Positions 1 through 59,991 of a stretch of 64,000 nucleotides of DNA are shown here, in pieces (the first letter of the stretch is position 1; every line of letters begins with the position of its first letter). Under the pieces are notes generated by a model, which did no database searches, was not told the origin of the DNA, and worked only from the letters and a program-made list of their open reading frames with translations. This DNA is from Octopus sinensis (lineage: Eukaryota). The translations under genes were made by a program, and so were the position numbers. Where the stretch lies: assembly GCF_006345805.1 (NCBI RefSeq), contig NC_042997.1, positions 205,902,001 through 205,966,000 on the forward strand, in the 5' to 3' direction.

Positions 1-179
1 AAGGGACACAGAAAAAAAACAAGGAGAGAAAAAATGCGTGTAGTAGCTAACAATCTATCATGGCGTCTTGACTTCGGACAATGGTCAGACGCGAGAGGGA
101 CAGTAGGGGAGATAACAGGGTCAAGTGACTTCTAATACGTAGGTGCCCCCAACACAAAGGTGCGTGTGTGTATAAGAGA

Positions 180-432
180 GTATGTATGTGCGTGTGAAAG
201 AGGTCTGGTGGTCTGGACGTGTGTGTGTATGTATGTGTGGGTGTAAAGATGTGGGGATGGGTGTGTGGGTGGTGTGTTGTGAAGTGATATGTGTATGTAT
301 GTGTAGGTGTAGAGATGTGGGGATGGGTGTGGGGGGAGGGGTATGGGATAGTGGTGAGGCATGTGGGATAGGGGTGAGGTGTGTGGGGGAAGGGGGTGGA
401 AGGTGGAGTATATATATATATATATACATATA
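180..432. repeat. GT/GGT-rich low-complexity tract ending in (TA)n
   Basis: Degenerate (GT)n, gtgggg and (TA)n runs. ORFs 121..429, 132..362 and 182..448 are artefacts of this tract. Confidence 0.9.
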
Positions 433-817
433 TATTACTCCTAACTAAATTATGGGAAACTATATAACGGCTTTTTCCTCAGTATCATGCGTTTGACATA
501 TGGATGCCTTGAAAAGATCTAAGAAGTCACTATACTTTCATAAATTTCCTAGTGTAACAGGAGAGAATAACAGGTGGGGACTTGTGGGAAAATGGGGATT
601 CGGTTTCAAATCCTAACTTACAAAGCTGGTAGCTATCTGCTACATATGTATATTATGTGTGTGTGTGTGTGTGCGTGTGTGTGTGTGTGTACACACACAT
701 ACTGAATTTTTGTGGAAAAAACACGCCAACAAGTGTGTGAGCGTACACAAACTGAAGAAAAACCATGCCAACTAGTGGCCACCATTAGAGAACACCAAGT
801 ATAGCGAGGAGAGTGTC

Positions 818-834
818 AAAAATGAAAGTGAAAT
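818..834 (+). promoter_or_regulatory. IRF-element-like motif (AAAAATGAAAGTGAAAT)
   Basis: Matches the tandem AANNGAAA / GAAAGTGAAA IRF consensus. Lies ~130 bp upstream of the GAS cluster. Confidence 0.45.
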
Positions 835-932
835 CTTCTCTAACCTACATTCGACTTCATTTCCTATAAAAAAAACTATCTCCAGCTTTTCTTCTTTTGA
901 AAAGTTGTTTTTTTTTTTATGTCGTCTGTTTT

Positions 933-1101
933 AGATAATAATAAAACTTTATCACAAAGTTTTCTTGGAAAATAAATTGTGTAAAAGAGGGCAGAGGGGA
1001 AGTGGTTTTTCTCGGAAGATAATGATAAACTTCTATCACAAAGTTTTCTTGGAAAATAAATTGTATAAAAGAGGGCAGAGGGTAAGTGTTTTTTCTGGGA
1101 A
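933..1101. promoter_or_regulatory. 84-bp tandem duplication carrying four GAS (STAT) palindromes
   Basis: TTCTTGGAA 962-970, TTCTCGGAA 1009-1017, TTCTTGGAA 1046-1054, TTCTGGGAA 1093-1101. Sites 1/3 and 2/4 are each exactly 84 bp apart. Confidence 0.6.
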
Positions 1102-1139
1102 AACCATTGATGTCATACAAAGTTGTTGTTAAACCAAAC

Positions 1140-1203
1140 GACAGCTTAAAAACGATTAGATAAAGATTATTCAAGTTTCAGTTTTACTCAGAGTTGTTAC
1201 GAG
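1140..1203 (+). other. Putative non-coding first exon of the PARP14-like gene (start not defined)
   Basis: Consensus donor GAG|GTAAGT at 1203/1204, just downstream of the GAS/ISRE cluster in a CpG-retaining region. No transcript evidence. An alternative donor AGG|GTAAGT lies at 1081/1082. Confidence 0.35.
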
Positions 1204-1220
1204 GTAAGTTTTCGTTTTAC
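1174..1220 (+). promoter_or_regulatory. Two ISRE-like motifs (AGTTTCAGTTTT at 1174-1185; AAGTTTTCGTTTTAC at ~1206-1220)
   Basis: The first is one mismatch from AGTTTCNNTTTC. The second reads AAAACGAAA on the minus strand. Confidence 0.35.
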
Positions 1221-1317
1221 ATCTCTCCATTGCTTTACAAATATTTCACAAAATCGCTTTCAATGCTTTTCACTACATTATAACTACGTGGATTTGTTGT
1301 TTCTTCTCCGTTTTCAG

Positions 1318-1377
1318 AATGTGTGTGTGTCTGTGTGTCTGTGTGTGTGCACGCGCGCGAATTTCCAAGTTTTGTAG
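1318..1377 (+). other. Putative small 5' exon containing a (TG)n microsatellite
   Basis: Strong pyrimidine tract plus acceptor (ttgttgtttcttctccgttttcAG, 1316-1317) and donor AG|GTATGT at 1377/1378. Confidence 0.25.
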
Positions 1378-1723
1378 GTATGTGTGATGTGTGTCATTAT
1401 GTATGTCTGCAAAGCCATCGATATTTTCTCTCTTCAAGCGAATCTACAGCTTCTGAAAGTTATGAAGAAACAAAACCGACGAAGGGGCACATGTGTAGGT
1501 ATGCCATGTTTTTCTGGTCATAAACTGGTGACCGGTAATAAAGTCACAAATAATTTATGTTCCCTCCCCCTAGGATAATCCCCCCAACGGACAAAACCCC
1601 CACCGTTTTCCTGTGACTTTTTTTTCATGTGGATTCCATAAAATTATGTTGAAAGTTTGAACGCGTGTCAAGCTCGAAATGGCAGCCAAATCTCCTCATA
1701 TAGGCCACACCCTAGAAGGACAA

Positions 1724-1912
1724 GCGAAATACTTAGTGGTATTTCATCTGTCTTTACTTTCTGAGTTCAAATTCCACCAAAGTCTTTGCCTTTCATCCTT
1801 TCGGGGTCGATAAATTAAGTACCAGTTGCATCCTGGGATTGATCTAATAGACTGGCCTCCCCACAAAAAGTTTCGGGCCTTGTGCCTAGAGTGGAAAAGA
1901 ATATTGAAGACG
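1724..1912 (+). mobile_element. tRNA-derived SINE, family A
   Basis: Core ttctgagttcaaattcc...cctttcatcctttcggggtcgataaattaagtaccagttg...ggccttgtgcctagag, repeated several times in the window. Confidence 0.8.
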
Positions 1913-2370
1913 ATGGAGTTTTGTGGCAAATGACCGCCGCCCCAGTAGAATGAAAATATAGCAAATCCGGGCTAGGTTTGAAACAGGAGTTGTAGTGAGA
2001 AGCAATCGAAAAGGTATGTGGAAACTTGTTTGGATTTGGTTTGAGAGAATCTCTGAATAAACAGATTTTATTTTTCTTTCGGTTCTATATTAATTGATGT
2101 AATACACCATACATACATACACACAGATATAGTATACATTTCATACATATACACACACATATACAAAACCTGTATACATTGATAAATGCAGGGTGGGAGG
2201 GACAAGTTCGAAGTTTGAAGTGCCATGTGGTTTTTAGCGAAATCGGAATAATTTGGTATCATCGAAAACGTGGGAATTATTTATCCAAGATTTCCCAACA
2301 GGTTTTCTATTAATTGAAGCCGCTTTAGTAAAAGGTTACTCTGTAATGTTTGTTGATCACGGAAATATAT

Positions 2371-2519
2371 ATTTCTTTACTACCCACAAGGGGCTAAACA
2401 CAGAGGGGACAAACAAGGACAGACAAACAGATTAAGTCGATTATATCGACCCCAGTGCGTAACTGGTACTTATTTAATCGACCCCAAAAGGATCTAACGT
2501 TTCTGCCAGCTCGCCGCCC
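2371..2519 (-). mobile_element. Internally deleted SINE family A copy with 18-bp target-site duplication
   Basis: ttgatcacggaaatatat at 2353-2370 and 2520-2537 flanks a reverse-oriented SINE head fused to the core. Confidence 0.75.
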
Positions 2520-3959: not shown

Positions 3960-6190
3960 ACAACAGCAACAACAATACAAAACAAATGAAACATAAAAAA
4001 TGCAAATATCGCCTCTGGGTCTTTTGCATCTGCAGTGGGAAATATGGAAAATTTCAATAGATGAAGAAGAATTAAAATTGGCAAGAAAAATTGTAAAAAG
4101 AGATGGGAGAAGGATAACACTAAACCCTCCATCTGACGTGATTGATGGAGGGTTTAGAGTTACCCTTCTCCCAGCAAGAATGGCCCTTGACCATTTCTTT
4201 GAGCCAAAACATGAAGGGTGCATTATCAGAGCTGAGGTCTATGCACTAAAACACGAAAGAACTAAAGCTATTCCATGGGCCCGAACTGTGGAGACAGAAT
4301 GTGGAAAAAAACCCACAATCGAGTCTTTGACGGATGAGGATAAATACGTGCTATTTGATTCTGAGCAGATGTCTGTGGCTTTCCAGCAGCACTTTGCATG
4401 GCTGTTTGGAGAGCATGATGGGTTGACGACAGTAGCGAACTTTATTTTGTACTTGGATGGTCTACCACCGCTCTCAGTGACGAACAGTAGATTCTGCAGA
4501 AAGCTGATTACAGCCTCTGAAATACAGGAAGTGGTGAGCTATTGCACAGTTGCAAATCATGTGGTTTGGATGGTTTGCACCACGAATTCTATGTTTACAT
4601 GCAAGATTTATTTGGAAGCCTCTTGCCAGATGTCTACAATAACTGGCAGCCGAACGGAAGAATTCCTAGTGCCCTTAGCCAGGGTGTGGTAATACTACTG
4701 GGAAAGGATGCCGACAATGGGGACATACTAGGGAATTTTAGGCCATAACTCTGCTAAACACAGAGTTTAAGATTTTGGTCAAGTTATTTGTGAAAAAGTT
4801 GGCACTTGTCATTGTTAGTCTCGTCGGGGAGGCACAAATGTACACAATCTTGAGTAGGTCTATCCATGACAATCTCCACCTTATGTGATACATTGTAGAG
4901 AGAGATGGAATTAAAGCTAGTTCCTGTAAAACCTGATCAATTTAGATCAGTCAAAAGCTTTCAATAGAGTAGACCATCACAACTTGGAAGCCATCCTTAA
5001 AACAGCCAGTTTTTGACTCATTTTCAGATGCTGGATTGCTGCAATGCACAGCAGCACCTGCCACCTATCTGAACCATTTAGGATCGCTTGTTCGGTCCAT
5101 CAGGGCTGCTCACTGTCACCTCTTCTGTACGAGCTGGCTCTCAAACCACTACTGTGGAAGTTGGAACAGTCAAGAGACCTCCCTTTCAAAATTGGACTAA
5201 GTGGGGGTGCATATGCAAGTTATATCATCGTCATAGTGTTGGATGCCTCCAAAGTAGAAACAGTCAGCCCCATTGTAAAGGAATATGAGTTAGTTGCAGG
5301 GGCTAAAACCAATGCCAGCAAGTCAGTGGGATCATGATTGGGCACCTGGAGAGGCAGATCGATGCCGTCGGACGCTGGGCTGATGGACCACTTAAACTGC
5401 TTGGGATCTGGTATGTTACCGAACTCCAGAATTGGGAAAAGGTGATGAACAGGGTGACCTGTCTTACCCAGAAATGGGCATAGTGGAAGCTGTCCCTGAA
5501 AGGTCGAGCAGAGGTGACAAATGCGTATGTCGCCTCTGTTAATATTTATTGTCTGACCGTCGCACTTACCTCAGTTCTCGTTGGATCAGATTGGAACTTC
5601 TGTTTATTTTCTTGTAGGAGTGATATGTTCCAATGGTCAAGTGGTCAGTTTGCTGCCAACTCCCTCTGTGTGGCAGCTTAAGCATGCCATGGCTTTTGAT
5701 GTGCAGACACACACTCAGATTGCACCGTCTGCTGCGATTTCTAGAAGGTGAACATGTATGGACTGTTTGTGAGACACGTCTTTCCATAGCTTGTCTCTTT
5801 GATGGAAATGGGTAAAGGATAGGCCAAGAATGGGCGCCTGACACTTAGAATGTCATCAGGCCTGCTCTGTCCTCAGGCAATAGGATAGGTTGATCTTCCA
5901 CTTCAGATATTTACAGAGGATTAGTAGCAGGGAAGTGTGATGATGTCCTCCGGGGGACCCTAGGTGTCAGTGAAGATGAACTGGCAAGTCTATTCCAAAG
6001 GACTTTCCAGTCGGGGACCATTGTGGATAATTTCCAGATGTCTTTGGCCTGGTAGTGCTACCAGTGGAGGGGATGCTATCAGTTTGCGATAAACTCTACA
6101 GGCATGGATGTGCTCACCGAGAAATGAAACCAATCTGCATACATTTGTTCAGGGTCTCAGTATTGCTGACTTGTTGAATTATGTTGAACA
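3960..6190 (+). mobile_element. Degraded Tx1/L1-like non-LTR retrotransposon ORF2 (RT)
   Basis: NFRPITLLNTEFKIL, DQSKAFNRVDH and SVHQGCSLSPLLYELAL RT motifs in broken frames (ORFs 4000..4692, 5044..5337). Confidence 0.85.
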
Positions 6191-6464
6191 GCTGCTGTTG
6201 TGCTACACACAAATTCATCTGTCATCCAAGTCCATAATGCTTCCAAGGGAAATAACCCATTCCTTCTCGAAAATAACCACCAAGGGAAATAACCCATTCA
6301 TCTTCAGTATGCTTATTTCTTAGTATTTGAACTATTTTAGTTATTTTCTCAATTTATCCAGTGCAACCCTTAAACAAGTAAATAGTATTTTCCTAAACAA
6401 TAAATCCACTTATTTCGGTTAGTGATTTATTCACGAATATACCAACACTAGTACCGCTGAGGGT

Positions 6465-6800
6465 AATATTCTCTGGGAACGCACAAAAGCCCTTTTCAGA
6501 GTTATATACTTTGAAGTGTTATTATCTCATACCTCTTATTACGTAACATGTTTCACAATTTTAGTATACATACCGTATTAGTATTTCTTCCCAAGTTCTA
6601 TATATTCTGGGAATGCAATAAAGTCCCTTTCAGGGCTACTTTATTTGAACTCTTACTATCGGGTTACTAATTATTACATAGCTGACTTCACAATTTGGGC
6701 ATTCGTAACTTATTGGGAATTCCTAAAAACAAGATCCTGTGTAAGACAGTTCGGTATTCTCTGTAAATGCACAAAACCGTTTTAAGGGCTACATACTTTG
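6465..6800. repeat. Three degenerate ~140-bp direct repeats
   Basis: attctctgggaacgcacaaaagcccttttcagagttatatactttg-like unit recurs near 6467, 6604 and 6757. Confidence 0.5.
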
Positions 6801-7220
6801 TATTGCTGTTACTGGATTAGTGAAACAGTTATGAGAACGGAACCAAGGGATAAGCCTGCTTTCCCGGGAATTACCAGATATGTCAGCTAGTACTTTTTAT
6901 TTTATCATTCCACTATATGTAAACCCCTTTGCTGGGTTTTGTTTTTACTTCCACAGGGTGTCAAAAATCCACCGTGCTCATCAAGTAAGTTTAGTGGGGT
7001 TGCTAGTTTAGTTGTCGATGACTCGATGGTTTCACAACTCCATCTGTTAACCATTCTGGCTAATTATCAATCTGGGTGATTATTTACTCATTCACTATTA
7101 TCATTTCACTTTTACTACTATAATCCCTATCTTATTATTTATTAGTTCACTACTGTAGTTTCACAATTATTACTATTTATAATGATGTTATTATTATAAG
7201 GCTGAGTCGGTCTTATAGTC

Positions 7221-11461: not shown

Positions 11462-11841
11462 TTAAGCCATGTGATAATGGCATCGATTCAAAACAATGTG
11501 AATAGACAGGCATTACATTTGACCGAGTAATCCGAATCCACAAGTCATTCTGTAGACATTATGGTTGGAGGCATGTTGTAAGCAGTATTCTTCACTTGCA
11601 CGGATGTGCGTGAACCACTTGAAGAATTGGATGCAGGTGGATATTGGAGGTGTTAGGATGTTGTTTCAAATAACTAGGGGAAGGATTTTCATCTCTCCCT
11701 TAACTGTGAGAAAGAGAAATAATATGAGAGAGAGGGAGTGAAAAACAACTTTGAGTACAAATGATGTATTCAATGCCTTAACGATGTTTTTTCCTAATTA
11801 TTTTCTTTTCATTTTGCAGAGTAAAAATACCTGTTGAAATC

Positions 11842-11854
11842 ATGGCAGAGAAAG
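11842..11854 (+). CDS. PARP14: PARP14-like macro-PARP, first coding exon (exon 11820-11854; MAEK, phase-1 end)
   Basis: Acceptor ttttcttttcattttgcAG (11818-11819), Kozak-type aatcATGG, donor AAAG|GTATTT. Splices in frame to 28889. Confidence 0.65.
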
Positions 11855-13554: not shown

Positions 13555-13830
13555 ATCATCATCATTGTTGAATGTTCATTTTCTATGCTGTCATGGATTG
13601 GACGGTTTGACTGGGGATTGGCAAGCCAGGAGGCCATACCAGGTTCCAATCTCACCTGGCAAGGTTTCTACAGCTTTTTACATGCTTTTTACTTGTCACT
13701 GGCATAGGGAGCCAGTCAGGTGGCACTGACATTGATCCACACTTGAATGGTGCTTATTACGTGTCACTGGCACTGGGAACCAGTCAGGCAGCACTGACAT
13801 CAACCCACGGTTGAATGGTGCTTGAATGAT
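13555..13830 (-). mobile_element. SINE family B (RTE-type 3' tail)
   Basis: (cat)n-tgttgaatgttcattttctatgctgtcatggattggacggtttgac tail plus internal ggtgctt..acgtgtcactggcac repeats. Confidence 0.75.
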
Positions 13831-13939: not shown

Positions 13940-16160
13940 TTCTATTCAGTGTTTTTAAATCTGTCTAAACTGATAATCTGTTTCTTACCATGCATATCCA
14001 AAGTTATAGTTTTATCTTTAATTGACAAAACTTTAAAAGGTCCAGTGTATTTATAATTCAGTGAATGATGACTAGCATCATAACATATAAATACATGAGT
14101 CCAAGAATTGATATCAGAAGGGAGGAAACTTTTAATATTTTGTAATTTACTTGTAAAAGAAGGAACATCAGAATTTGCAAAAGTACCTAATGGTGCTTTA
14201 ATGTGATGATTCACTTTTGCTTCTTGGCACTGCATACACGATTGAACCCAAGAACGAATATCCTTATTCATGCTGGGCCAAACAAATTGACTCGATATTA
14301 ATTTTAATGAAGCTCCAATACCAGGATAAGATAAATTATGTAAGGTAGAAAAAACAACTTTTCTATGTCTTTCAGGCACAAATGGTCTAGAAATACCAGT
14401 AGAAATATCACACCTAACCCTAACCTTAACCCTCACCCTAACCCCACATATATAAAAAAATAAAAATTTTACGGAAAGTGACGATCTTCTTCAAATGTAA
14501 ACAAATACACGTACCACTGGAAGCTGTTCTTGAACTTGTTGCAAGCAACAGCAGTAATTGTATTCACCTCAAAAGACATCATTAATTGGTTGAAATTGCC
14601 GAAATACAAGAAATTAAACAAGAAATAGCTTACAAAATACAGAATTTTCTCAAGAAAGCCAAGAGAAAAAGATGTTTTATGCGACACATTCTACCAGCAT
14701 ACGAAGTTTAAAAGTGTTTAGTTACAAAGAAATTATTTTTAAAATCTGCCGGTCAAAGTGAAAAGATCCATTTTCAACACCCTTCATATACTGTATATCC
14801 ACAGTATACTGTGAAATATAATCAAGGTGTCTAATTTATTTGGGAGAATATTTTTCAGAAGAATTTTTTAGTGCATGTGTCAATGGTTTATGGTCAGTAA
14901 ATAATGTAAATGACCTACCTTCAAGAAGATGTCTGAAGTATTTAGTTAACAAGTAAGCTGCCAATAATTCTCAGCCGAAAACACTGTGTTTCGTTTCTGG
15001 TGCCTTGAATTTCTTTGAAAAGAATGATAATGGTGGCCAAGAACCACAATGAAACTGTTGTAAAACTCCACCGATTCCAACATCAACTACTAATGATAAT
15101 TTTGCTTCAGGAACCGGATGACTCAAAAGTGTTTCTTCACAAAGTTTTCCTTTTATGCAATGAAAGGCCTGTAATTCTTCACCTTTTAAAGCTATAGCTT
15201 CATTTTTCTTTTTCCTATTCTTTAATAATTCAGTTAGAGGAAATAGAATTTCTGTGCAATTGTGGAATGAAACGTCTCTAAAAATTAATGAGTCCTAAAA
15301 ATTCTCAATGCTTTTTGTAAAGAATTTGGTATTGGAAATTTGTTATTAGCTTCAACTTCGTCTGGCAGTGGGTGAATTCCAGCTTTATCAATGAGATGAC
15401 CTAAAAAAGATACAGTGCGTTCACTGAAAACACACTTTGATGGATTTATCACTATACCATATTTAGTCAGTCTTTCAAAAATATGTTTTAAGTGATTTTC
15501 ATGAACTTCTTCTGGCGGACTAGCAATGAGAATATCGTCTATATTAGCAAATACAAAAGGTAAATCTTTTGTTACTTTGTCAATGAATCTCTGAATCCTC
15601 AATCCAAAAGGCATACAAAATAATTCATACAAGTGAAACGGAGTTGTAATTGTAGTTTTTGGTATATCATTCTCTTCAACAAGAATTTGATTGTATGCTC
15701 TAACTAAATCTATTTTCAAAATGTTATTACAACCACTCAATGAAGCTGCAAAATCATGGATATGTGGAATAGAATAGTTATCTTGTAGTGTTTTTGCATT
15801 AAGCTGTCTAAAATCTCTGCATGGATGCCAGTCTGTGAGATTTTTTTTTACCAAAACTAAAAGTGTAGACCAAGTACTGCTAGAAGGCTGAATTATTCTG
15901 AGGTCTAACATGTGACAAAATGTGGCCTTAGCAATCTTTAATTTCTCTTGATATAGTCTACAAGGTTTGGAAAAACTTGGTGGTCCATGGGTCACAATGT
16001 GATGACTGACTGAATGAACACATTTGGTGTTTAGAGCTAATGGTTTTGTAAATTCAGGGTAATTCTTCAAAATCCTGTAATAATGATTTTTGGAGTATGC
16101 CATAAAATATAACAGACTAATTGTCGCATTCCCGCATCTCATGCCTTGAATGTTCCTCAA
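13940..16160 (-). mobile_element. Degraded Gypsy (CsRn1-like) LTR retrotransposon pol: RT, RNase H and integrase pieces
   Basis: RT ORF 15285..16160 (DFRQLNAKT..D.YSIPHI, KIDLVRAYNQI, NIDDILIAS, SFLGH). RNase H at ~14870-15250 (LSFFSKK..ELLAAY..FTDHKPL). Integrase zinc finger in 13942..14436 (LHNLSYPGI..FVWPSMNKDIRSWVQSCMQCQ). Confidence 0.9.
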
Positions 16161-24738: not shown

Positions 24739-24904
24739 CTTAAATACAGAGGTCCCTTAATGTTACTCTTTAAATACAGGTGTTACTTACAAAACATGTA
24801 TGCTGTGTGGACATGTAATGACACCGTAGCCCTAACCCTAACCCTAAAAACTAACCCTCCCCTTCATATCATTACATAGATGCATTGGGACCTCTGTATT
24901 TAAG
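24739..24904. mobile_element. 166-bp MITE-like element with perfect 18-bp inverted repeats enclosing (CCCTAA)n
   Basis: cttaaatacagaggtccc (24739-24756) is the exact reverse complement of gggacctctgtatttaag (24887-24904). Internal ccctaaccctaaccctaa. Confidence 0.65.
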
Positions 24905-26129: not shown

Positions 26130-26480
26130 ACCATCATCATCATCATCGTTTAACATCCGCTTTCCATGCTAGCATGGGTTGGACGGTTCAACTGGGGTCT
26201 GGGAAGCCCGAAGGCTACACCAGGCCAGTCAGATCTGGCAGTGTTTCTACAGCTGGATGCCCTTCCTAACACCAACCACTCCGTGAGTGTAGTGGGTGCT
26301 TTTTATGTGCCACCGACACAGGTGCCAGACAAGGCTGGCGAATAGCCACACTCGGATGGTGCTTTTTACGTGCCACCGACACGGAGGCCAGGCGAGGCTG
26401 GCATGGCCATGATCGGATGGTGTTTGTTACGTGCCACCAGCACATAGGCCAGTCGATGCGGTGCTGGCTACGGCCACGTT
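26130..26480 (-). mobile_element. SINE family B with internal ~60-bp tandem units
   Basis: RTE-type tail plus three ggtgctttttacgtgccacc(g/a)gcac units. Confidence 0.8.
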
Positions 26481-28888: not shown

Positions 28889-29062
28889 ATGCAGAAAATC
28901 TAGTCTGGCAAGAAGATGCAATGATTGTGTCAAATGGCCCCAAAGACATGTCTGAAGAAATGTTAATTGCTTTTTTGGAAGAGAACGGGAAATTAGAAAT
29001 TCTACATGTCTTCCCTGGAAGAAAACCTGGAACTTTTCTTGTGTATTGCGAAAATGAAATTG
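28889..29062 (+). CDS. PARP14: PARP14-like coding exon 2 (RRM-like domain 1)
   Basis: ttttcAG acceptor, G|GTAAGT donor, 174 nt (phase 1-1). (D)AENLVWQEDAMIVSNGPKDMSEEMLIAFLEENGKLEILHVFPGRKPGTFLVYCENEI. Confidence 0.8.
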
Positions 29063-34151: not shown

Positions 34152-34385
34152 ATTTTGAGGATGTTCAGAGGATGTGCCAAAACAACCCCTTAAAAGGAAA
34201 TCAACTGAAAGTGGATAGAATTAAGGAAATAAACAGTGTTCAAGTGAAAAACGTTTCTTCAAATGTCAGCTCTGACAGTCTTCGAAGATATTTTGGAAAC
34301 AGTAAAAGAAGTTCTGGTGGAGATATTTCTTCAGTTCTACAACAAACCTCTGATACTTATATTATAAGTTTTAAAGAGGCGTGTG
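34152..34385 (+). CDS. PARP14: PARP14-like coding exon 3 (RRM-like domain 2)
   Basis: ttgcAG acceptor, G|GTAAGT donor, 234 nt (phase 1-1). SVQVKNVSSNVSSDSLRRYFGNSKRSSGGDISSV matches the LYFEN.RRSGGG.V signature of PARP14/PARP10/NMI-type RRMs. Confidence 0.9.
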
Positions 34386-35429: not shown

Positions 35430-35930
35430 CTGCACCAGTTCTACATAGCCCCTGCCCATTCAAAGTACCTTGGATTCCAGAACATCCCGCTGTGCTTGAG
35501 GAGACCTACTGAGTCAAGTACATGAACATCGAATAAATATCAATGGAAATAGTAGTTGTGATACCTGTGCTGGTGGCACATAAAAAGCACCATCCGAATG
35601 TGGCCAATGCCAGCACCGCCTCGACTGGCTTCTGTGCCAGTGGCACATAAAAAGCACCGTCCGAACGTGACCGATGCCAGCGCTGCCTTGGCTGGCTCCC
35701 GTGCCGGTGGCACATTAAAAACACCAACCGATCGTGGCCGATGCCAGACTCCCCTGGCACGTAAAAAGCACCCACTACACTCGCGGAGTGGTTGGCATTA
35801 TTAGGAAGGGCATTCAGCTGTAGAAACACTGCCAGATCAGACTGGAGCCTGGTGCATCCACTGGCTTCCCAGACCCCGGTCGAACCGTCCAACCTGTGCT
35901 AGCGTGGAAAACGGACGTTAAATGATGATG
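35430..35930 (+). mobile_element. SINE family B, long copy with four internal tandem units
   Basis: gtaccttggat...gcttgaggagacctactgagtcaagt head region, repeated aaaaagcacc..cgaa.gtggcc.atgccag units, RTE-type tail. Confidence 0.8.
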
Positions 35931-38125: not shown

Positions 38126-40431
38126 AATGCATGCATTGCATAGGTTATCTACAGCTGTTCTCATCCATATGGAACCCATGACCAAACCAGCACAGTCGTT
38201 TCTCTTGCACACCACATCTGATGCTTCTTATGTTCAGCCTTTCTCTCAGGGTGCTTACACTTTGTCATGTATGCACACTGACATTGCATATCCAGCGGAG
38301 CACACTGGCTTCATTACTTTCAAGCCTACATATGTCCTCAGAAGTCACAGCCCATGTTTTGCTGCCATGTAGCATGGTTGTTCACACACATACTTAATGT
38401 AGTCTACCTTCACTCTGAGAGAGAGGCCCTTTTTCACCAGCAGACGTAAGAGCTCCCTGAACTTTGCCCAGGCTATTCTTATTCTAGCAGCTACACTCTC
38501 AGAGCAACCACCCCCACTACAGACTTAGTCACCTAGACAATAGAATCTGTCAACTGCATCTAGTTTTACCCCTGGAATGTGATGAAATCTATTTTCTGTA
38601 CATCTTTGAAGTTTATTGCCGTTGTGCACCTGCCACACACAAAAACTATCTTCTCAGTTAACCTTCCTTTGATATTGCTGTACCTCTTATGTGTCTATAG
38701 CTTACACTGGGTGCATCATATGAAGTTTCTATCTATGCCTTTTCTACAGATCAAGCAGGGCCATCAACCTGAAGGGATTTGTGGTTTGTCTGCCTTCCTA
38801 CTTATTAAGACTTTGGTTTTAGCTTTGTTGACTCTAAGGTCCTTCGATTCTAATCCTTGTTTTCACACTTGAAACTTCTCGAGTTCTGATAGGGACTCAG
38901 CTATTAGAGCAAGGTCACCAGCATAGAGGAGCTCCCAGGGGCAGCCTCCCTTGAATTCCTCTTTTATTGCCTGGAAGACTTTGATGAATAAGATGGGGCT
39001 GAGGACTGATCCTTGGTGAACCCCTACTTCTACCCAGAATTCTTCATTATACTCCTTGCTAACCCTCACCTTACTGACAGCATCCCTGTATATGGCTTGT
39101 ATGGCTCTCACCAACCACTCATCCATCCCCAGTTTACACATTGCCACCAGATAAGGGATCGGGGACCCTGTCGAAGGCTTTCTCCATGTCAACGAAAGCC
39201 AGGTACAGAGGTTTATCTTTGGCTAGGTATTTCTCCTGCAGCTGTCTTACCAGAAATATGGCATCAGTGGTGTTTCTCCCTGGCACAAACCCAAACTGCA
39301 TCTCATCCAAACTGACTCTATCCCTAATTAGTTGGGCTATGAACCTCTCCATGACCTTCATTAGCTGATCCAACAGCTTGATACCTCTGTAATTATCCAT
39401 ATCTAATGCGTCACCTTTACCTTTGTAGCAGTTGGCTATTATGCTGCTACACCAGTCATTGGGTATAACTCCTTCATGTATCACCTGGTTGGCTATATGG
39501 ATGACTAGAATATACTGCATCTCAGCAGTACTTCTTTATGGACCAGAGGATTTCCTTGTCTTCATACCCTTAATTGCTTTCTCTGTCAAGGTACTGTCAA
39601 TTTGAATAGCTGGTCCCTATGTTGGGTCAGTATTTTTCCATGTCTCTCTCTTTGCAGCCTCATTAAATGCAAGTGAGCCATCATCCATGCGGACACAGTT
39701 CTCTCCTATGACATCATGATTCTCTCTCCCACACATCTTGCAGCACGAAACACTTCAAGTCTCTGGTCCTCATGGAGCAGAACATTGGCAAATTTTTTCT
39801 CATCTCTGGCTAAGTAAACTTGTCTCCTAGCTTCTCTTGTGGCAATCTGATACAGTTCCCTGCCACCAACTGACTTCCCATCCTTACATGCCTGAGTCTC
39901 TTTCCTAATGGCCTCATAAGCTACATTGTTCCACCACCATGACACCTTAGAAAGAGAGGGGACTTTACACTGTCCAAAGATCTGGTCAGTAGCCCTCAAC
40001 ACGTTCTGTTGGAACTTCCAGTTGTCTTCCACATAATGTGATGCTATATCCTCCTCTATTTTGTAAAAAGCTTCCAGTAATACGTCTCTAAATCTCTGTC
40101 CATTCAGATGATCCTTAAGCTTCCAGACCCTTCTTTTCTATATTGGTCATCTTCTGAGCATCTATTTAGCCCTAATCGCAAAGTCACTAACTACTAATCT
40201 ATGTTGTGGTATGCATTCTTCACCTGGTAAATCTGGGCACTTATAAGCAGCCATCTTTCCTGTTTCCTGGTGAGGATGTAGTCAATCTGACTAGTGTGCC
40301 CACAGACTGGTAGATGAATGGGTGTCTGACAGGTTTCCTGAAGTTAGTATTACAGATCGTAAGGTCATTTGCATTACAGAACTCCAACAGCCTGGTTCCC
40401 TCCTCATTCCGGAAACCAAACCTGTTGCCAC

Positions 40432-47382: not shown

Positions 47383-50300
47383 ATTCCAGTGATGTTTATG
47401 GTCAATACAATAAGTACCAGTTGAGCACTGGGGTTGACGTAATTCACTTAGTCACTCTCCTGAAATTGCTGGCCTTGTACCAAAATTTGAAACCAAAATT
47501 CCAGTGATGTTTATGGTCAATAAAATAAGTACCAGTTGAGCACTGGGGTTGATGTAATTGACTTATCCACTCTCCTGAAATTGCTGGCCTTGTGCCAAAA
47601 TTTGAAACCAAAATTTCAGTGATGTTTATGGTCAATAAAATAAGTACCAGTTGAGCACTGGGGTTGATGTAATTGACTTAGCCACTCTCCTGAAATTGCT
47701 GGCCTTGTGCCAAAATTTGAAACCAAAATTTCAGTGATGTTTATGGTCAATAAAATAAGTACCAGTTGAGCACTGGGGTTGATGTAATTGACTTAGCCAC
47801 TCTCCTGAAATTGCTGGCATTGTGCCAAAATTTGAGACCAAAATTCCAGTGATGTTTATGGTCAATACAATAAGTACCAGTTAAGCACTGGGGTTGATGC
47901 AATTCACTTAGACACTCTCCTACATTGCTGGCCTTGTGCCAAAATTTGAAACAAACATTCCAGTGATGTTTATGGTCAATAAAATAAGTACCAGTTGTGC
48001 ACTGCGGTTGATGTAATTGACTTAGCCACTCTCCTGAAATTGCTGGCCTTGTGCCAAGATTTGAAACAAACATTCCAGTGATGTTTATGGTCAATAAAAT
48101 AAGTACCAGTTAAGCAATGGGGTTGATGTAATTCACTTAGACACTCTCCTAAATTGCTGGCCTTGTCCCAAAATTTGAAACCAACATTCCAGTGATGTTT
48201 ATGGTCAATACAATAAGTACCAGTTGAGCACTGGGGTTGATGTAATTGACTTAGCCACTCTCCTGAAATTGCTGGCCTGGTGCCAAAATTTGAAACCAAA
48301 ATTCCAGTGATGTTTATGGTCAATAAAATAAATACCAGTTAAGCACTGGGGTTGATGTAATTCACTTAGACACTCTCCTAAATTGCTGGCCTTGTGCCAA
48401 AATTTGAAACAAACATTCCAGTGATGTTTATGGTCAATACAATAAGTACCAGTTGAGCACTGAATTGATGTAATTGACTTAGCCACTCTCCTGAAATTGC
48501 TGGCCTTGTGCCAAAATTTGAAACAAACATTCCAGTGATGTTTATGGTCAATAAAATAAGTACCAGTTGAGCACTGGGGTTGATGTAATTGACTTAGCCA
48601 CTCTCCTGAAATTGCTGGTCTTGTGCCAAAATTTGAAACCAAAATTCCAGTGATGTTTATGGTCAATAAAATAAGTACCAGTTAAGCACTGGGGTTGATG
48701 TAATTCACTTAGACACTCTCCTAAATTGCTGGCCTTGTGCCAAAATTTGAAACAAATATTCCAGTGATGTTTATTGGTCAATAAAATAAGAACCAGTTGT
48801 GCACTGGGGTTGATGTAATTGACTTAGCCACTCTCCCGAAATTGCTGGCCTTGTACCAAAATTTGAAACCAAAATTCCAGTGATGTTTATGGTCAATAAA
48901 ATAAGTACCAGTTGAGCACTGGAGTTGATGTAATTGACTTAGCCACTCTCCTGAAATTGCTGGTCTTGTGCCAAAATTTGAAACCAAAATTCCAGTGATG
49001 TTTATGGTCAATAAAATAAGTACCAGTTGAGCACTGGTGTTGATGTAATTGACTTATCCACTCTCCTGAAATTGCTGGCCTTGTGCCAAAATTTGAAACC
49101 AAAATTTCAGTGATGTTTATGGTCAATAAAATAAGTACCAGTTGAGCACTGGGGTTGATGTAATTGACTTAGCCACTCTCCTGAAATTGCTGGTCTTGTG
49201 CCAAAATTTGAAACAAACATTCCAGTGATGTTTATGGTCAATAAAATAAGTACCAGTTGAGCACTGGGGTTGATGTAATTGACTTATCCACTCTCCTGAA
49301 ATTGCTGGCCTTGTGCCAAAATTTGAAACCAAAATTTCAGTGATGTTTATGGTCAATAAAATAACTACTAGTTGAGCACTGGGGTTGATGTAATTGACTT
49401 ATCCACTCTCCTGAAATTGCTGGCCTTGTGCCAAAATTTGAAGCCAAAATTTCAGTGATGTTTATGGTCAATAAAATAAGTACCAGTTGAGCACTGGGGT
49501 TGATGTAATTGACTTAGCCACTCTCCTGAAATTGCTGGCCTTGTGCCAAAATTTGAAACCAAAATTTCAGTGATGTTTATGGTCAATAAAATAAGTACCA
49601 GTTGAGCACTGGGGTTGATGTAATTGACTTAGCCACTCTCCTGAAATTGCTGGCCTTGTGCCAAAATTTGAAACGAAAATTTCAGTGATGTTTATGGTCA
49701 ATAAAATAAGTACCAGTTGAGCACTGGGGTTGATGTAATTGACTTAGCCACTCTCCTGAAATTGCTGGCATTGTGCCAAAATTTGAGACCAAAATTCCAG
49801 TGATGTTTATGGTCAATACAATAAGTACCAGTTGAGCACTGGGGTTGATGCAATTCACTTAGCCACTCTCCTACATTGCTGGCCTTGTGCCAAATTTGAA
49901 ACAACATTCCAGTGATGTTTATGGTCAATAAAATAAGTACCAGTTGAGCACTGGGGTTGATGTAATTGACTTAGCCACTCTCCTGAAATTGCTGGTCTTG
50001 TGCCAAAATTTGAAACAAACATTCCAGTGATGTTTATGGTCAATAAAATAAGTACCAGTTGAGCACTGGGGTTGATGTAATTGACTTATCCACTCTCCTG
50101 AAATTGCTGGCCTTGTGCCAAAATTTGAAACCAAAATTTCAGTGATGTTTATGTTCAATAAAATAACTACTAGTTGAGCACTGGGGTTGATGTAATTGAC
50201 TTATCCACTCTCCTGAAATTGCTGGCCTTGTGCCAAAATTTGAGACCAAAATTTCAGTGATGTTTATGGTCAATAAAATAAGTACCAGTTGAGCACTGGG

Positions 50301-52323: not shown

Positions 52324-52532
52324 ATTTCTAGTATTTTTATAATTAATAGAGATAGTGTTTACTTTGTATCAGTTAAATATTAATTATATTTTTCTGTTTG
52401 CTAATGTATTATAATAATAAGATATAACTTAATCTTGAAATACTTTTCTGTATTTACCCACTGAACTCCCCAGTTCACCTCTTTTTCCTCACTAACGAAA
52501 TGATTTTATCTTTTTACTTTTTCTTAATTTAG

Positions 52533-53950
52533 TTGTGCTGAACGTTTGTAGAATGCCACATCAATTGGAAGGTGTGAAGTTAGATGTTCAACCATTCTGG
52601 AAACCACCTGAAGAAAATATCATTTCAAAACAGCAAGTCCATGACTATTCACTACCTACCAAGTTCCATCTGAATTTTTTAAAGAAACATAGAACTGATT
52701 AATGACAAATTAAAGACTTTGGCTGATGTTCTTTGGGAAGATTCCAAGATTAATAAACTGAGATTTAAATATTCTGAAGAAAATTTTGAAGAAATTGAAC
52801 AGTGTTTGAAAGATTTATTAAATTCCATTACTGTTGAAACTATTGATGTTCCAGATGATATGTTTGAAGACATTGTTGGAACATTTGACAGTCAAGATGA
52901 GCGGAAGTATTTTTATTTTGATAACCGATATCATAAAGCTCATATTCTCGGATTCGATAAAAGTAACGTGATTAAAATGAAAAAGAGACTTTTGGATAAT
53001 CTTAGAACTAAATCTGCGGATGATTTAACTATTTATGAAAGACGTATTCTATCTGGTCTCGGATTCTTTGAGCAGGCAGAAGGACAATTTGAAGGTCTAA
53101 AAGTCACAGTTCATAGTAACAAAGTTGTTTTTGAAGGCCAGTTTTCCGAAATAGATATTTGTCAAAAGAAAATGTATAAAATTCTTAAGTCAATTGTTAA
53201 ATCTGAATTGTGTTTGCCTTTAAATACTGGAATGATCATAAATAAAAAACCAGTGAAAGAATATCTTGATGAAAAACTGAGAAACAAGAAATGTATCGGT
53301 TCATGGGAAACGGGTGATGGTGATTCAGTAATACTTTATGCAAGTGATAAAACACATCTTTCACTTCTGGAAGAAATCATGAAAGAAACTTTTGTTGCCA
53401 ATACACTGGATTTTGTAGACAAAATTAAGGATACTCCAAATCATGGAAAGTGGCTGACATTTGTTGAAAGTCTAAAAGAAGAGTTCCAGATTTCTGTTTT
53501 ATTGGAGAAAATTCTATTGTTGCTGTTGATGCTGTAGTTAATGATATAAAAAGCAAAATTGATAACTTTAAGCAAGGAATCGATGGATTCAGGGAAAAAA
53601 ATAAATTGAATAATGTGTTACACCTGGAAAGAACACAAGAGCAAATTAGGGGAACGGAAAGAGTTACAAGAAATTCCAGAAATGTTGAATCGTTTAAATC
53701 TCAAGAAACCCAGAAAGTGAAGAAGGAAAGAATTTCTTATGTGAAATGCAGAAGCAATCTGAGAGCATAATATCATTAAATTCAGATTTAGGAAGTGAAA
53801 CAGATGAAATAGTTAATGTTAAGTATAAGAACTGTGAAATAGTGTTGAAGGAAGGTGACATCACGACTCTGGACACAGATGCTATTGTTAATGCTGCAAA
53901 TGGCAGACTGGAACACAGGGGTGGGGTTGCAGCAGCCATTGTGAAGAAAG
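52533..53950 (+). pseudogene. PARP14: PARP14-like coding exon 4 (end of RRM, KH-like array, first half of macrodomain 1), frameshifted
   Basis: Acceptor ttcttaatttAG, donor AAAG|GTTAGT. Starts VVLNVCRMPHQLEGVKLDVQPFW, includes the 272-aa ORF 52719..53537, ends [33 protein letters not shown]. Length 1418 nt is not a multiple of 3. Stops at 52700 (entry frame) and 53535 force at least 3 frame changes. Confidence 0.8.
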
Positions 53951-55407: not shown

Positions 55408-56040
55408 ATCATCATCATCATCATCATCATCTTTTAATGTCCGTTTTCCCTGCTCGCATGGATTGGACTATTTGACTGAGATCTGGAGAGCCAGTGACTG
55501 CACCAGGATTCAGTCTGATCTGGCAAAGTTTCTACAGCTGGATGCCCTTCCTAACACCAACCACCCCGAGAGTGTAGGGGGCACCTTATATGTTCCACTG
55601 GCACAGAAGCCAGTCAGACAGGCCTAGCATCGATCATGTTCAGACAGTGCCTTTTACGTCCCACCGGCACGGGCCAATCAGGGGGCACTGGCATTGGCGA
55701 TGTTCAGATGATGCTTCTTATGTGCCACCAGCACAGGGGCCAGTCAGTGGGTACCGGCATTGGCCATGTTTGGATGGTGCCTTTTGCATGCCACTGGCAT
55801 GGGAGCCAGTCAAGGGGTATTGGCATCGGACCTACTACAAGCACAACATCTGAAATTTGGGGGAGGGAATGAGTCGATGACATCGACCTCAGTGTTTCAC
55901 TGGTACTTAATTTATCGACTCTGAAAGCATAAAGGGTAAAGTGAACCTTGGCAGAATTTAAACTCAGAATGTAACAACAGACAAATTACTGCTAAGAATT
56001 TCATCCATCATGCTAATGATGCTGCCAGCTTGCTGCCTTA
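55408..56040 (-). mobile_element. SINE family B (55408-55850) adjoining SINE family A (55850-56040)
   Basis: RTE-type tail with internal tandem units, then reverse-complement family A core. Confidence 0.75.
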
Positions 56041-57403: not shown

Positions 57404-57640
57404 TGCTTTGAAGAGAGGAGAAAGTGAAAAGGCAATGTTTGCTTTGAAGTGGGATTAGAAAGTGAAAAGGTGATATTTGCTTTGAAGTGTGAGCAGAAAG
57501 TGAGAGAGAGGCGAAAGTGAAAGATGTATGTATGTGTATGTGAAATGGATGTGTATTTATGTGTGCATGTGCATGAGAGAGTGAGTGAAGGCATGTGTTG
57601 TCATCTATCTATTTTTTGTTTGTGGCACTTACTTGCTCTT

Positions 57641-59742: not shown

Positions 59743-59991
59743 GTGGGTCTGAAATTCAAACTGAATCTAACAAAATTATGAAAGAAAGAAGGAGTGAACT
59801 GAAAACTGGAGAAGTAGTGTCAACTAATGCTGGTAAACTCAAATGCAAGACTATCATTCATGCTGTTGGACCCGTTTGGAATAATGGATGGAATCAGGAA
59901 ATGGATTACCTTTCAAGAGCTGTTCAAAATTGTTTGGCAGTTCTTGAAGAAAAGTCTTATACATCAATTGCAATTCCTGCCATCAGTACAG
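59743..59991 (+). CDS. PARP14: PARP14-like coding exon 5 (second half of macrodomain 1)
   Basis: ctttgcAG acceptor, G|GTAAGA donor, 249 nt (phase 1-1). GGSEIQTES...GEVVSTNAGKLKCKTIIHAVGPVW...SIAIPAISTG, canonical macrodomain motifs. Confidence 0.92.

What the first reader, a model, noticed from the sequence alone, without database searches (positions are those of the whole stretch)
933..1101. Four STAT/GAS palindromes, doubled by an 84-bp duplication, at the presumed promoter of an invertebrate PARP14-like gene
Seen: TTCTTGGAA (962), TTCTCGGAA (1009), TTCTTGGAA (1046) and TTCTGGGAA (1093). All fit TTC(N3)GAA. The two copies differ at several positions, including the spacer of the second site, yet all four palindromes survive. 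Established: vertebrate PARP14/PARP9 are interferon-stimulated genes controlled through STAT1/IRF sites, and molluscs have JAK, STAT and IRF genes but no recognised interferon. Inference: this is a STAT-inducible promoter whose site number was doubled, a candidate read-out of a cephalopod interferon-like antiviral pathway. Caveats: only two sites are independent, and the link to the ATG 10.7 kb downstream is inferred.
Basis: partly seen in the sequence, partly recalled or inferred. Interest (0 to 1): 0.72.

Follow-up and report, generated by a model that had tools for sequence, protein, structure and literature searches.

The report
Duplicated STAT-like sites, octopus PARP14-like promoter
The four STAT-type palindromes are real and lie in the probable promoter of an Octopus sinensis PARP14-like gene, but only the one nearest the gene is kept across the gene family (with an interferon-response-like element upstream), and no binding or induction has been shown.

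Summary
In detail: an 84-bp unit is tandemly duplicated at 933-1101, giving four TTCN3GAA sites, two of them independent.

By count alone this is not beyond chance. The window holds 31 sites against 25 expected. A pair within 60 bp arises in 41% of simulated windows. Survival of all four sites despite 8 copy differences has P=0.28.

The window is 100% identical to Octopus sinensis CM016859.1. RefSeq starts a PARP14-like CDS at ATG 11842.

Homologues of window 760-1300 lie upstream of at least nine PARP14-like paralogue 5' ends in O. sinensis and O. vulgaris. They are not a dispersed repeat. All share:
- an ISRE/IRF-like GAAAGTGAAA block;
- the proximal palindrome TTCT[C/G][G/A]GAA, invariant half-sites in 12 of 12 units, variation only in the spacer;
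- a candidate exon 1 ending in GAG|GTAAGT.

The distal palindrome is kept only in the three closest copies.

The duplication predates the species split, and the O. vulgaris orthologue has three units. In another paralogue the ISRE-bearing 30-bp unit is amplified about 26-fold.

Verdict: a plausible IRF/STAT-type inducible promoter. The TSS, STAT binding and inducibility are untested. Exon 4 carries three frame disruptions in the assembly.

The parts
818..838 (+). ISRE/IRF-E-like block AAAAATGAAAGTGAAATCTTC (core GAAAGTGAAA at 824-833)
   Evidence: Read; the exact core is located. It is the best-conserved upstream block across the paralogue promoters. In L007 the 30-bp unit that carries it is repeated 25.7 times.
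933..1016 (+). 84-bp unit, copy 1 (upstream)
   Evidence: TRF. Alignment of the two copies shows 8 differences in 86 columns. The O. vulgaris orthologue has the same copy-specific differences.
1017..1101 (+). 84-bp unit, copy 2 (proximal; carries the intact TATA box)
   Evidence: TRF.
962..970 (.). Distal TTCN3GAA palindrome, copy 1 (TTCTTGGAA)
   Evidence: Kept only in the window, its orthologue and L006-minus; changed in L003, L007, L008, L009b and L006-third.
1009..1017 (.). Proximal TTCN3GAA palindrome, copy 1 (TTCTCGGAA); spans the duplication junction
1046..1054 (.). Distal TTCN3GAA palindrome, copy 2 (TTCTTGGAA)
   Evidence: conservation as for 962-970.
1093..1101 (.). Proximal TTCN3GAA palindrome, copy 2 (TTCTGGGAA), inside the longer near-palindrome TTTTTCTNGGAAAA
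   Evidence: The half-sites are invariant in 12 of 12 units from 9 promoter copies; spacer variants are TCG, TGG and TCA.
980..987 (+). Degenerate TATA box of copy 1 (TGTAAAAG)
   Evidence: Unit 1 of the O. vulgaris orthologue has the same change.
1064..1071 (+). TATA box TATAAAAG of copy 2. It predicts a TSS near 1090-1100, overlapping the proximal palindrome (inference).
   Evidence: Also present in the orthologue, L006-minus and L006-third; weaker or absent in L007, L003, L008 and L009b.
1108..1115 (.). CRE/ATF-like TGATGTCA inside the conserved block. The ATG at 1110-1112 opens a 17-codon upstream ORF that ends at TAA 1161-1163.
   Evidence: The motif naming is from memory.
1095..1203 (+). 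Inferred non-coding exon 1. The 5' end is predicted only; the donor GT is at 1204-1205 (GAGTTGTTACGAG|GTAAGT).
   Evidence: The donor and its flank are nearly invariant across the paralogue promoters (one T>G change, in L008 and the L009 copies). No transcript evidence was obtainable.
11820..11854 (+). Exon 2 with the start codon ATG 11842-11844 (MAEK, ends in phase 1)
   Evidence: RefSeq XP_029658111.1 starts here. The same exon is present in O. vulgaris locus L001.
28889..29062 (+). Exon 3 (RRM-like), in frame with exon 2
   Evidence: tblastn at 100% to P0024.
34152..34385 (+). Exon 3b (PARP14-type RRM); the boundaries are approximate
   Evidence: tblastn of P0024; Pfam RRM_PARP14_3.
52533..53950 (+). 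Exon 4, with three small frame-disrupting deficits relative to XP_036364582.1 (near 52697-52700, 53480 and 53715)
   Evidence: Three-frame translation; tblastn frame jumps. P0024 ends at the resulting stop codon, 52700-52702.
59743..59991 (+). Exon 5 (continuation of the first macro domain); the gene runs on beyond the window
   Evidence: Pfam Macro and PARP domains in P0002.

Best explanation
The 169 bp are a tandem duplication of the TATA-proximal module of the promoter of an Octopus sinensis PARP14-like gene (CM016859.1, about 205.90 Mb).

This promoter type is shared by a young cluster of PARP14-like paralogues. Its layout is: an ISRE/IRF-like GAAAGTGAAA block; then (TATA) plus a proximal TTCN3GAA palindrome; then a short non-coding exon 1 ending in GAG|GTAAGT, spliced to the ATG exon 10.6 kb downstream.

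Most likely mechanism (inferred, not shown): the promoter is inducible. An IRF binds the ISRE-like block and a STAT dimer binds the proximal palindrome, as in vertebrate interferon-stimulated genes.

The duplication arose by replication slippage or unequal crossing-over before O. sinensis and O. vulgaris split. It has since grown to three units in O. vulgaris. It adds one more proximal and one more distal palindrome upstream of the working TATA box. The distal palindrome is a young, lineage-restricted addition of doubtful function.

What is shown: the anatomy, the gene identity, the paralogue and orthologue conservation, and the copy-number change. What is inferred: the TSS, the exon 1 to exon 2 splice, binding by STAT or IRF, inducibility, and any selective value of the doubling.
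For: Gene and locus:
- The window is identical to the RefSeq assembly, and the CDS of XP_029658111.1 starts at 11842.
- The exons match the PARP14-like protein XP_036364582.1 at 96-100%.
- Domains found are PARP14-type RRM, two Macro domains and a PARP catalytic domain.

Promoter anatomy:
- TATAAAAG lies at 1064-1071 and a consensus donor at 1203/1204.
- Exons 2, 3 and 4 are phase-compatible.

Family conservation:
- Homologues of 760-1300 sit upstream of paralogues L003, L007, L008 and L009 (two copies), at three places in L006, and just beyond the edge of L010. They are collinear with intron 1 and exon 2.
- The proximal palindrome has invariant half-sites in 12 of 12 units, with variation only at two spacer positions.
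- The ISRE-like block and the donor are conserved.

Array history:
- The orthologue has 3.0 units. Units 1 and 3 match window copies 1 and 2, and unit 2 is a copy-2/copy-1 hybrid, the pattern expected from unequal crossing-over.
- The TATA box is degraded only in the upstream copy.

Parallel amplification:
- The ISRE-bearing 30-bp unit is repeated 25.7 times in L007 and twice in L008.

Context from papers:
- PARP14 is interferon-induced in vertebrates, and PARP9/DTX3L use an IFN-gamma-responsive promoter (PMC13224862).
- PARP14 is listed among the differentially expressed antiviral effector genes in virus-challenged oysters (PMC12803857).
- JAK/STAT and IRF genes are present in a cephalopod genome that lacks a recognisable IFN homologue (PMC7665748).
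- STAT, IRF and ETS motifs were found at poly(I:C)-induced genes in Nematostella (PMC8476169).
Against: - No transcript, CAGE or binding data could be reached, so the TSS and the exon 1 to exon 2 junction are unverified.
- TTCN3GAA is short. Its density and its survival here are within chance.
- The proximal palindrome lies inside a roughly 45-nt conserved block that probably contains the TSS, so its conservation may reflect core-promoter constraint rather than STAT binding.
- The paralogues are young. An intron 1 stretch (1901-2370) is 92-94% identical between copies, more than the promoter at 74-86%, so conservation alone is weak evidence of selection.
- The distal palindrome is not maintained.
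- O. vulgaris gene models place their first coding exons elsewhere: 12 kb upstream in L006 and about 3 kb downstream of the promoter homologue in L007 and L008.
- Exon 4 has three frame disruptions in the assembly, and RefSeq splits the locus into two models.
Confidence: 0.5

Rival explanations
1. Neutral promoter minisatellite with fortuitous motifs. The stretch is the promoter, but the TTCN3GAA matches are chance features of an A/T-rich sequence. The conserved proximal palindrome is conserved because it overlaps the TSS or core promoter, or because it binds another factor (ETS-type GGAA readers, a kappaB-like GGGAAAACC, or something else). The duplication is slippage with no regulatory meaning.
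For: - Site counts and site survival are within chance.
- The TATA box at 1064 predicts a TSS right at 1093-1101 (inference).
- The whole surrounding block is conserved, not only the half-sites.
- The distal site decays freely.
- The array length varies between species.
- The window is full of other tandem repeats.
Against: - Variation at the proximal site is confined to the two central spacer positions, with recurrent C/G exchange, which is the pattern expected of a STAT site.
- An IRF-type element is co-conserved and has been amplified independently in paralogues.
- The gene family is interferon-regulated in vertebrates (PMC13224862).
Confidence: 0.3
2. Not the promoter of this CDS. The true TSS lies elsewhere: close to exon 2, in the more conserved intron stretch 1901-2370, or far upstream. 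On this reading 760-1300 is an enhancer, an alternative or untranslated exon, or a leftover from segmental duplication.
For: - No transcript evidence was available.
- The O. vulgaris models start 12 kb upstream (L006), or in an extra exon about 3 kb downstream of the promoter homologue (L007, L008).
- L001 and L002 lack the homologue within the sequence fetched.
- Window 1901-2370 is better conserved than 760-1300.
Against: - The GAG|GTAAGT donor and its exon flank are almost fully conserved across the copies.
- A TATA box lies 30 nt upstream of the conserved block.
- The module is always on the sense strand, upstream of and collinear with the ATG exon.
- The first coding exons in the O. vulgaris records are very short or absent from the window, and nothing could be checked about what supports them.
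Confidence: 0.12
3. Relic promoter of a decaying gene copy. The window's paralogue is a pseudogene (three frameshifts in exon 4, first RRM exons lost), so the motifs are no longer under selection, whatever they once did.
For: - Exon 4 changes frame three times in the assembly.
- RefSeq's older model stops at the first break.
- The family has many truncated models.
Against: - All three breaks are 1-2-nt deficits in short repeats, as expected of long-read assembly errors.
- XP_036364582.1 reads through them with the residues that the paralogues have. This suggests evidence-based correction by the annotators (inference).
- Outside the three breaks the assembly keeps long open reading frames that match XP_036364582.1 at 96-100%.
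Confidence: 0.1
4. Part of a dispersed repeat or LTR. The 84-bp unit belongs to a mobile-element family that carries its own TATA box and enhancer repeats.
For: The window is rich in retroelement remains (RVT_1 and integrase ORFs) and in SINE-like repeats.
Against: BLAST of 700-1300 against the window plus ten further octopus loci (about 690 kb) finds homologues only at collinear 5' ends of PARP14-like paralogues, always followed by the same exon 1 donor.
Confidence: 0.03

Closest known systems
Vertebrate interferon-stimulated gene promoters that combine GAS and ISRE elements (IRF1, GBP genes; the IFN-gamma-responsive PARP9/DTX3L bidirectional promoter; PARP14 itself)
   Same: A PARP14-type gene. 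A TTCN3GAA palindrome close to the start site plus a GAAANNGAAA element about 270 bp upstream. TATA-containing, inducible-type architecture. That PARP14 and PARP9 are interferon-regulated is stated in PMC13224862.
   Different: There is no recognisable interferon in cephalopods (PMC7665748). Binding and induction are untested. The elements lie in tandem arrays whose copy number changes between species and paralogues. No DTX3L partner or bidirectional arrangement was seen.
Drosophila STAT92E target regulatory regions (clustered TTCN3GAA sites at Socs36E, multimerised in the 10xSTAT92E reporter; the virus-induced gene vir-1)
   Same: An invertebrate STAT reading TTCN3GAA, where the number of sites scales the output. 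Here nature has multimerised a two-site fragment. This comparison is from my own knowledge and was not checked in a paper here.
   Different: The Drosophila sites are experimentally validated. The octopus sites are motif matches, and only one of them has family-wide conservation.
Mollusc and crustacean 'interferon-like' systems (oyster CgIFNLP/CgIFNR-3 and the cGAS/STING-TBK1-IRF axis; shrimp IRF-Vago)
   Same: Lophotrochozoan and arthropod pathways in which IRFs and JAK/STAT drive ISG-like genes. Oyster CgIFNR-3 activates human ISRE and GAS reporters (PMC8218723; PMC4602278).
   Different: Those studies used heterologous vertebrate reporters or IRF sites in cytokine promoters. No native cephalopod GAS/ISRE promoter has been described in the papers found.
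Promoter minisatellites (VNTRs) that change the number of transcription-factor sites
   Same: Head-to-tail units of tens of base pairs at a promoter. Copy number differs between close species (2 against 3). A hybrid unit shows unequal crossing-over.
   Different: No population data. No expression difference has been linked to copy number.

Membership tests
GAS (STAT-binding) element | Palindrome TTCN3GAA | tested here: met
   Four matches at 962, 1009, 1046 and 1093. All are TTCTNGGAA, that is, one optimal GGAA half-site each.
GAS (STAT-binding) element | Half-sites constrained and spacer free among orthologues and paralogues | tested here: inconclusive
   Proximal site: half-sites invariant in 12 of 12 units, spacer TCG, TGG or TCA. 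However, it lies in a generally conserved block and the paralogues are young. Distal site: not conserved (TTCTCATGAA, TTCTTGCAA, or absent) in L003, L007, L008, L009b and L006-third.
GAS (STAT-binding) element | Lies in the regulatory region of a transcribed, inducible gene | tested here: inconclusive
   A TATA box, a conserved exon 1 donor and collinearity with the RefSeq CDS support a promoter. No transcript or induction data were reachable.
GAS (STAT-binding) element | Bound by an activated STAT dimer; mutation abolishes induction | not testable with these tools
   Needs EMSA, CUT&Tag and reporter assays.
ISRE / IRF-E | Core GAAANNGAAA, conserved at a fixed position in related promoters | tested here: met
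   GAAAGTGAAA at 824-833. The same block is present in the orthologue, L003, L006-third, L008 and L009b, as GAAAATGAAA in L006-minus, and as GAAAGTGAAG/T in L007.
ISRE / IRF-E | IRF or ISGF3-like binding and induction | not testable with these tools
   No binding data.
PARP14-like gene | PARP14-type RRMs, macro domains and an ARTD catalytic domain | tested here: met
   P0024: RRM_PARP14_3 (1.3e-14). P0002: Macro (two stretches, 8.8e-59) and PARP catalytic domain (3.7e-16).
PARP14-like gene | Three macro domains and a WWE domain, as in human PARP14 | tested here: not met
   Pfam finds two Macro stretches and no WWE domain at E <= 0.01. The architecture is therefore 'PARP14-like', not a strict PARP14 orthologue.
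PARP14-like gene | Intact reading frame | tested here: inconclusive
   There are three frame disruptions in exon 4 of the assembly. The RefSeq protein reads through them.
Dispersed repeat / transposable element | Many copies at unrelated loci, with element termini or element genes | tested here: not met
   The only homologues in about 690 kb are at PARP14-like 5' ends, collinear with exon 1 and intron 1. A whole-genome search was not possible.
Tandem duplication / promoter minisatellite | Head-to-tail copies with copy-number change between relatives | tested here: met
   2.0 copies in the window, 3.0 in the O. vulgaris orthologue, and one in the other paralogue promoters.

The most novel reading that the evidence does not exclude
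Cephalopods have an interferon-like, IRF/STAT-driven regulon, and the expanded PARP14-like gene cluster is one of its main read-outs. Under pathogen pressure, the pieces of this family's promoter that carry response elements have been amplified repeatedly and independently. The GAS-bearing 84-bp unit is present 2-3 times in the window's lineage. The ISRE-bearing 30-bp unit is present about 26 times in one O. vulgaris paralogue and twice in another. A further triple GAAAGTGAAA repeat lies in an intron of the window's gene. On this reading the arrays tune inducibility, and they would provide native reporters with which to find the unknown cephalopod cytokine.
Probability: 0.2. Interest if true: 0.65.

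Novelty: new member of a known kind. Interest (0 to 1): 0.4.

Why it matters
If the proximal palindrome and the ISRE-like block work as STAT and IRF sites, this would be, among the papers I found, the first native cis-regulatory module tying a cephalopod gene to a JAK/STAT-IRF antiviral response.

It would also give a short, ready-made reporter fragment (about 760-1210). With it one could search for the cytokine and receptor that stand in for interferon in cephalopods, an open question in comparative immunity (PMC7665748, PMC8218723).

The paralogue series is useful in itself. It offers one, two or three GAS units, and 1, 2 or 26 ISRE units, which is a natural dose series for testing how the number of sites sets inducibility.

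If the sites are not functional, the finding is an ordinary promoter minisatellite in a repeat-rich genome.

Tried and rejected
1. A protein search with the 264-aa middle part of exon 4 alone found nothing. A concatenated exon query with X at the frame breaks then found the Octopus PARP14-like family.

2. XP_036364582.1 (P0002) is not on record in the contig index, so the later RefSeq gene range could not be read. The index gives CDS ranges only, so RefSeq UTRs could not be used to map the TSS.

3. L001, L002, L004 and L005 (O. vulgaris, O. sinensis, O. bimaculoides) have no homologue of 700-1300 in the DNA fetched. No O. bimaculoides promoter could be compared. L010 begins 40 nt inside the homologous region.

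4. The dispersed-repeat idea is rejected; see the rival explanations.

5. The idea that site density proves function is rejected on the statistics.

6. Literature searches on octopus PARP14 induction found no immune-challenge expression data. There was only a skin-mucus proteome in which a PARP14-like protein rose in aquarium-kept animals.

7. The bacterial promoter/terminator scanner, Rfam, and the phage, plasmid and E. coli collections were not used, because they do not apply to an animal promoter.

Full report
**1. Observation**

The array is real. Tandem Repeats Finder gives one array at 933-1101: period 84, 2.0 copies, 91% matches. TTCN3GAA occurs at 962 (TTCTTGGAA), 1009 (TTCTCGGAA), 1046 (TTCTTGGAA) and 1093 (TTCTGGGAA).

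The copies differ at 8 of 86 aligned columns, one of them the central spacer base of the second site. The 1009 site straddles the junction: TTCTCGGA ends copy 1, and its last A is the first base of copy 2.

**2. Chance**

Counting does not make the cluster remarkable.
- The window holds 31 TTCN3GAA against 25.3 +/- 5.5 in dinucleotide shuffles, and 13 of 100 shuffles reach 31.
- Once the duplication is collapsed, two sites 47 bp apart remain. Pairs within 60 bp arise 0.54 times per simulated window, and 41% of simulations have at least one.
- Unrelated clusters exist at 8014/8028 and at 20055/20117/20191.
- The probability that eight differences miss all 12 half-site columns is 0.28.

Any case for function must therefore come from context and comparison.

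**3. The gene**

The + strand carries exons of a PARP14-like gene.
- Exon 2 (11820-11854) holds ATG 11842 (MAEK). It is phase-compatible with exon 3 (28889-29062), and exon 3 with exon 4 (52533-53950). Exon 5 (59743-59991) continues a macro domain.
- A concatenated exon query finds Octopus sinensis XP_036364582.1 (P0002, PARP14-like isoform X4), which matches the window's exons at 96-100%. It also finds a family of paralogues at 67-88% identity in O. sinensis, O. vulgaris and O. bimaculoides.
- A second RefSeq model, XP_029658111.1 (P0024), is the N-terminal part: MAEK... through exons 3, 3b and 4.
- The locus fetched for that model is 100% identical to window 1842-62702. The window is therefore CM016859.1:205,902,001-205,966,000, and the RefSeq CDS starts at window 11842.
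- Pfam finds a PARP14-type RRM, two macro stretches and a PARP catalytic domain, but no WWE domain.

Exon 4 changes frame three times in the assembly. Each break is a 1-2-nt deficit relative to XP_036364582.1. P0024 ends at the first resulting stop codon. Assembly error and pseudogene cannot be told apart here.

**4. Is 760-1300 a promoter?**

Directly downstream of the array lies a consensus splice donor (GAGTTGTTACGAG|GTAAGT, exon end 1203). Copy 2 has a canonical TATAAAAG at 1064-1071, whereas copy 1 has TGTAAAAG. The TATA box predicts a start near 1090-1100, that is, at the fourth palindrome. This is inference.

The stretch is not a dispersed repeat. BLAST against the window and ten further octopus loci (about 690 kb) finds homologues only upstream of PARP14-like paralogues:
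- L003 7183-7647;
- L007 about 6750-7180;
- L008 about 6640-7070;
- L009, two copies;
- L006, three copies;
- the edge of L010.

In several of these the match continues collinearly into intron 1 and to the ATG exon.

L006 21289-23761 is the O. vulgaris orthologue, 96-98.5% identical to window 1-2400.

Across seven aligned promoter copies, 189 of 320 ungapped columns are invariant. The donor and its exon flank are almost fully invariant.

This supports a shared first exon and promoter, but I could reach no transcript data. O. vulgaris gene models also start their CDS elsewhere: 12 kb upstream in L006, and in an extra short exon about 3 kb downstream of the promoter homologue in L007 and L008. 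That extra exon is absent from the window.

**5. What is conserved**

*Proximal palindrome (window sites 2 and 4).* It is present in all 12 units of 9 promoter copies as TTCT[C/G][G/A]GAA. The six half-site bases never vary, and the two central spacer bases do (TCG, TGG, TCA). In single-unit promoters it is the centre of a longer near-palindrome, TTTTTCTNGGAAAAA.

*Distal palindrome (sites 1 and 3).* It is kept only in the window, its orthologue (already broken in unit 1: TTATCTTGGAA) and the 93%-identical L006-minus copy. It reads TTCTCATGAA (N4 spacing) in L003 and TTCTTGCAA in L007. It is unrecognisable in L008, L009b and L006-third.

*Upstream block.* The best-conserved upstream block is AAAAATGAAAGTGAAATCTTC at 818-838, whose core GAAAGTGAAA is an ISRE/IRF-E-type motif. 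It is retained in nearly all copies.

*Caveat.* The paralogues are young. Intron stretch 1901-2370 is 92-94% identical to L007 and L008, more than the promoter itself at 74-86%. The proximal palindrome also lies in a roughly 45-nt conserved block that probably includes the start site. Conservation is therefore suggestive, not proof.

**6. History of the array**

The orthologue has 3.0 units (L006 22214-22462). Its units 1 and 3 carry the same copy-specific differences as window copies 1 and 2. The duplication therefore predates the sinensis/vulgaris split.

Unit 2 is a hybrid: the body of copy 2 with the 3' junction of copy 1. That is the product expected from unequal crossing-over. The single unit of L006-minus looks like the undivided ancestor.

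Other paralogues amplified a different piece of the same promoter. In L007 a 30-bp unit carrying AAATGAAAGTGAAG is repeated 25.7 times (6001-6770) directly against the promoter, and L008 has two copies.

**7. Mechanism and rivals**

*Best reading (confidence about 0.5).* This is an inducible, ISG-type promoter. An IRF binds the GAAAGTGAAA block and a STAT dimer binds the proximal palindrome. The 84-bp duplication adds one more proximal and one more distal palindrome upstream of the working TATA box.

This fits what is known.
- PARP14 is interferon-induced, and PARP9/DTX3L use an IFN-gamma-responsive promoter (PMC13224862).
- PARP14 is listed among the differentially expressed antiviral effector genes in virus-challenged oysters (PMC12803857).
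- Cephalopods have JAK/STAT and IRF genes but no recognisable interferon (PMC7665748).
- Oysters have an IFN-like protein whose receptor activates ISRE and GAS reporters (PMC8218723).
- STAT, IRF and ETS motifs were found at poly(I:C)-induced genes in Nematostella (PMC8476169).

*Rivals.*
- A neutral minisatellite with fortuitous motifs, where the conserved palindrome is core-promoter sequence (0.3).
- The TSS lies elsewhere (0.12).
- A relic promoter of a decaying copy (0.1; not exclusive of the others).
- A transposable element (0.03).

**8. Verdict**

STAT binding, inducibility and any selective value of the doubling remain inference.

This is a new member of a known kind (GAS/ISRE-type promoters and promoter minisatellites). 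Its interest is moderate and rests on how directly it can be tested.

Noticed in passing
L007 6001-6770 (O. vulgaris OX597814.1, locus of paralogue P0020): A 30-bp tandem array of 25.7 copies (unit CAAAAATGAAAGTGAAGTCTCTCCAGGCGT), each carrying an IRF-type half-site. It abuts the paralogue's promoter exactly where the window has its single ISRE-like block. A 273-aa ORF with no Pfam hit is annotated across it and is probably spurious.
   Followed up: partly
window 57404-57525: A 38-bp tandem repeat in the intron between exons 4 and 5. It holds three more exact GAAAGTGAAA cores (57420, 57458, 57513), the only other exact copies in the window. It may be an intronic IRF-type enhancer or a chance minisatellite.
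   Followed up: partly
window 52690-52705, about 53475-53490, about 53710-53725 (exon 4): Three 1-2-nt deficits relative to RefSeq protein XP_036364582.1 shift the frame. RefSeq's older model XP_029658111.1 stops at the first break. The window is identical to the assembly, so this is either long-read assembly error or a true pseudogene.
   Followed up: partly
window 1901-2370 (intron 1): This stretch is 92-95% identical to the paralogue loci L001, L007 and L008, more conserved than the promoter itself (74-86%). It may be an alternative exon, an enhancer or a gene-conversion tract.
   Followed up: no
window 47383-52327: A 115-bp satellite of 43 copies (93% matches) fills most of the intron before exon 4. 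The same satellite lies at the same place in the paralogue loci L001, L002, L003 and L006.
   Followed up: partly
window 1110-1163: If the TSS is near 1095, exon 1 contains an upstream ATG (inside the CRE-like TGATGTCA) that opens a 17-codon ORF ending at TAA 1161-1163. The ATG is conserved in most paralogue promoters (ATA in L003).
   Followed up: no
L006 2585-3438 (minus strand) and 5671-7091 (plus strand): Two further copies of the promoter plus exon 1 module lie 15-19 kb upstream of the O. vulgaris orthologous promoter, in head-to-head orientation. The plus-strand copy is degenerate and split by an insertion. The annotated O. vulgaris gene (P0026) starts at an 8-nt coding exon between them and the orthologous promoter.
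   Followed up: partly
window 13942-16160, 39134-39520, 61484-61795 (minus strand): Retroelement remains within the introns: reverse-transcriptase (RVT_1) and integrase zinc-binding ORFs. Short telomere-like runs (CCTAAC/CCCTAA) lie at 14413-14444 and 24830-24847.
   Followed up: partly
window 13683-13823, 26295-26456, 35564-35747, 55635-55826, 59333-59529: A recurring element, found in both orientations, that contains 61-68-bp internal tandem units (GGTGCTTTTTACGTGCCACCGGCAC...). It looks like a dispersed SINE-type family.
   Followed up: no
window 62901-64000: A degenerate 18-bp tandem array (about 47 copies, 61% matches) runs to the end of the window, within the intron after exon 5.
   Followed up: no
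window 1071-1090 (and 987-1006 in copy 1): The conserved block GAGGGCAGAGGG(G/T)AAGTG between the TATA box and the proximal palindrome contains an ETS-type GGAAGT core in copy 1 and in most paralogues (GTAAGT in copy 2).
   Followed up: no
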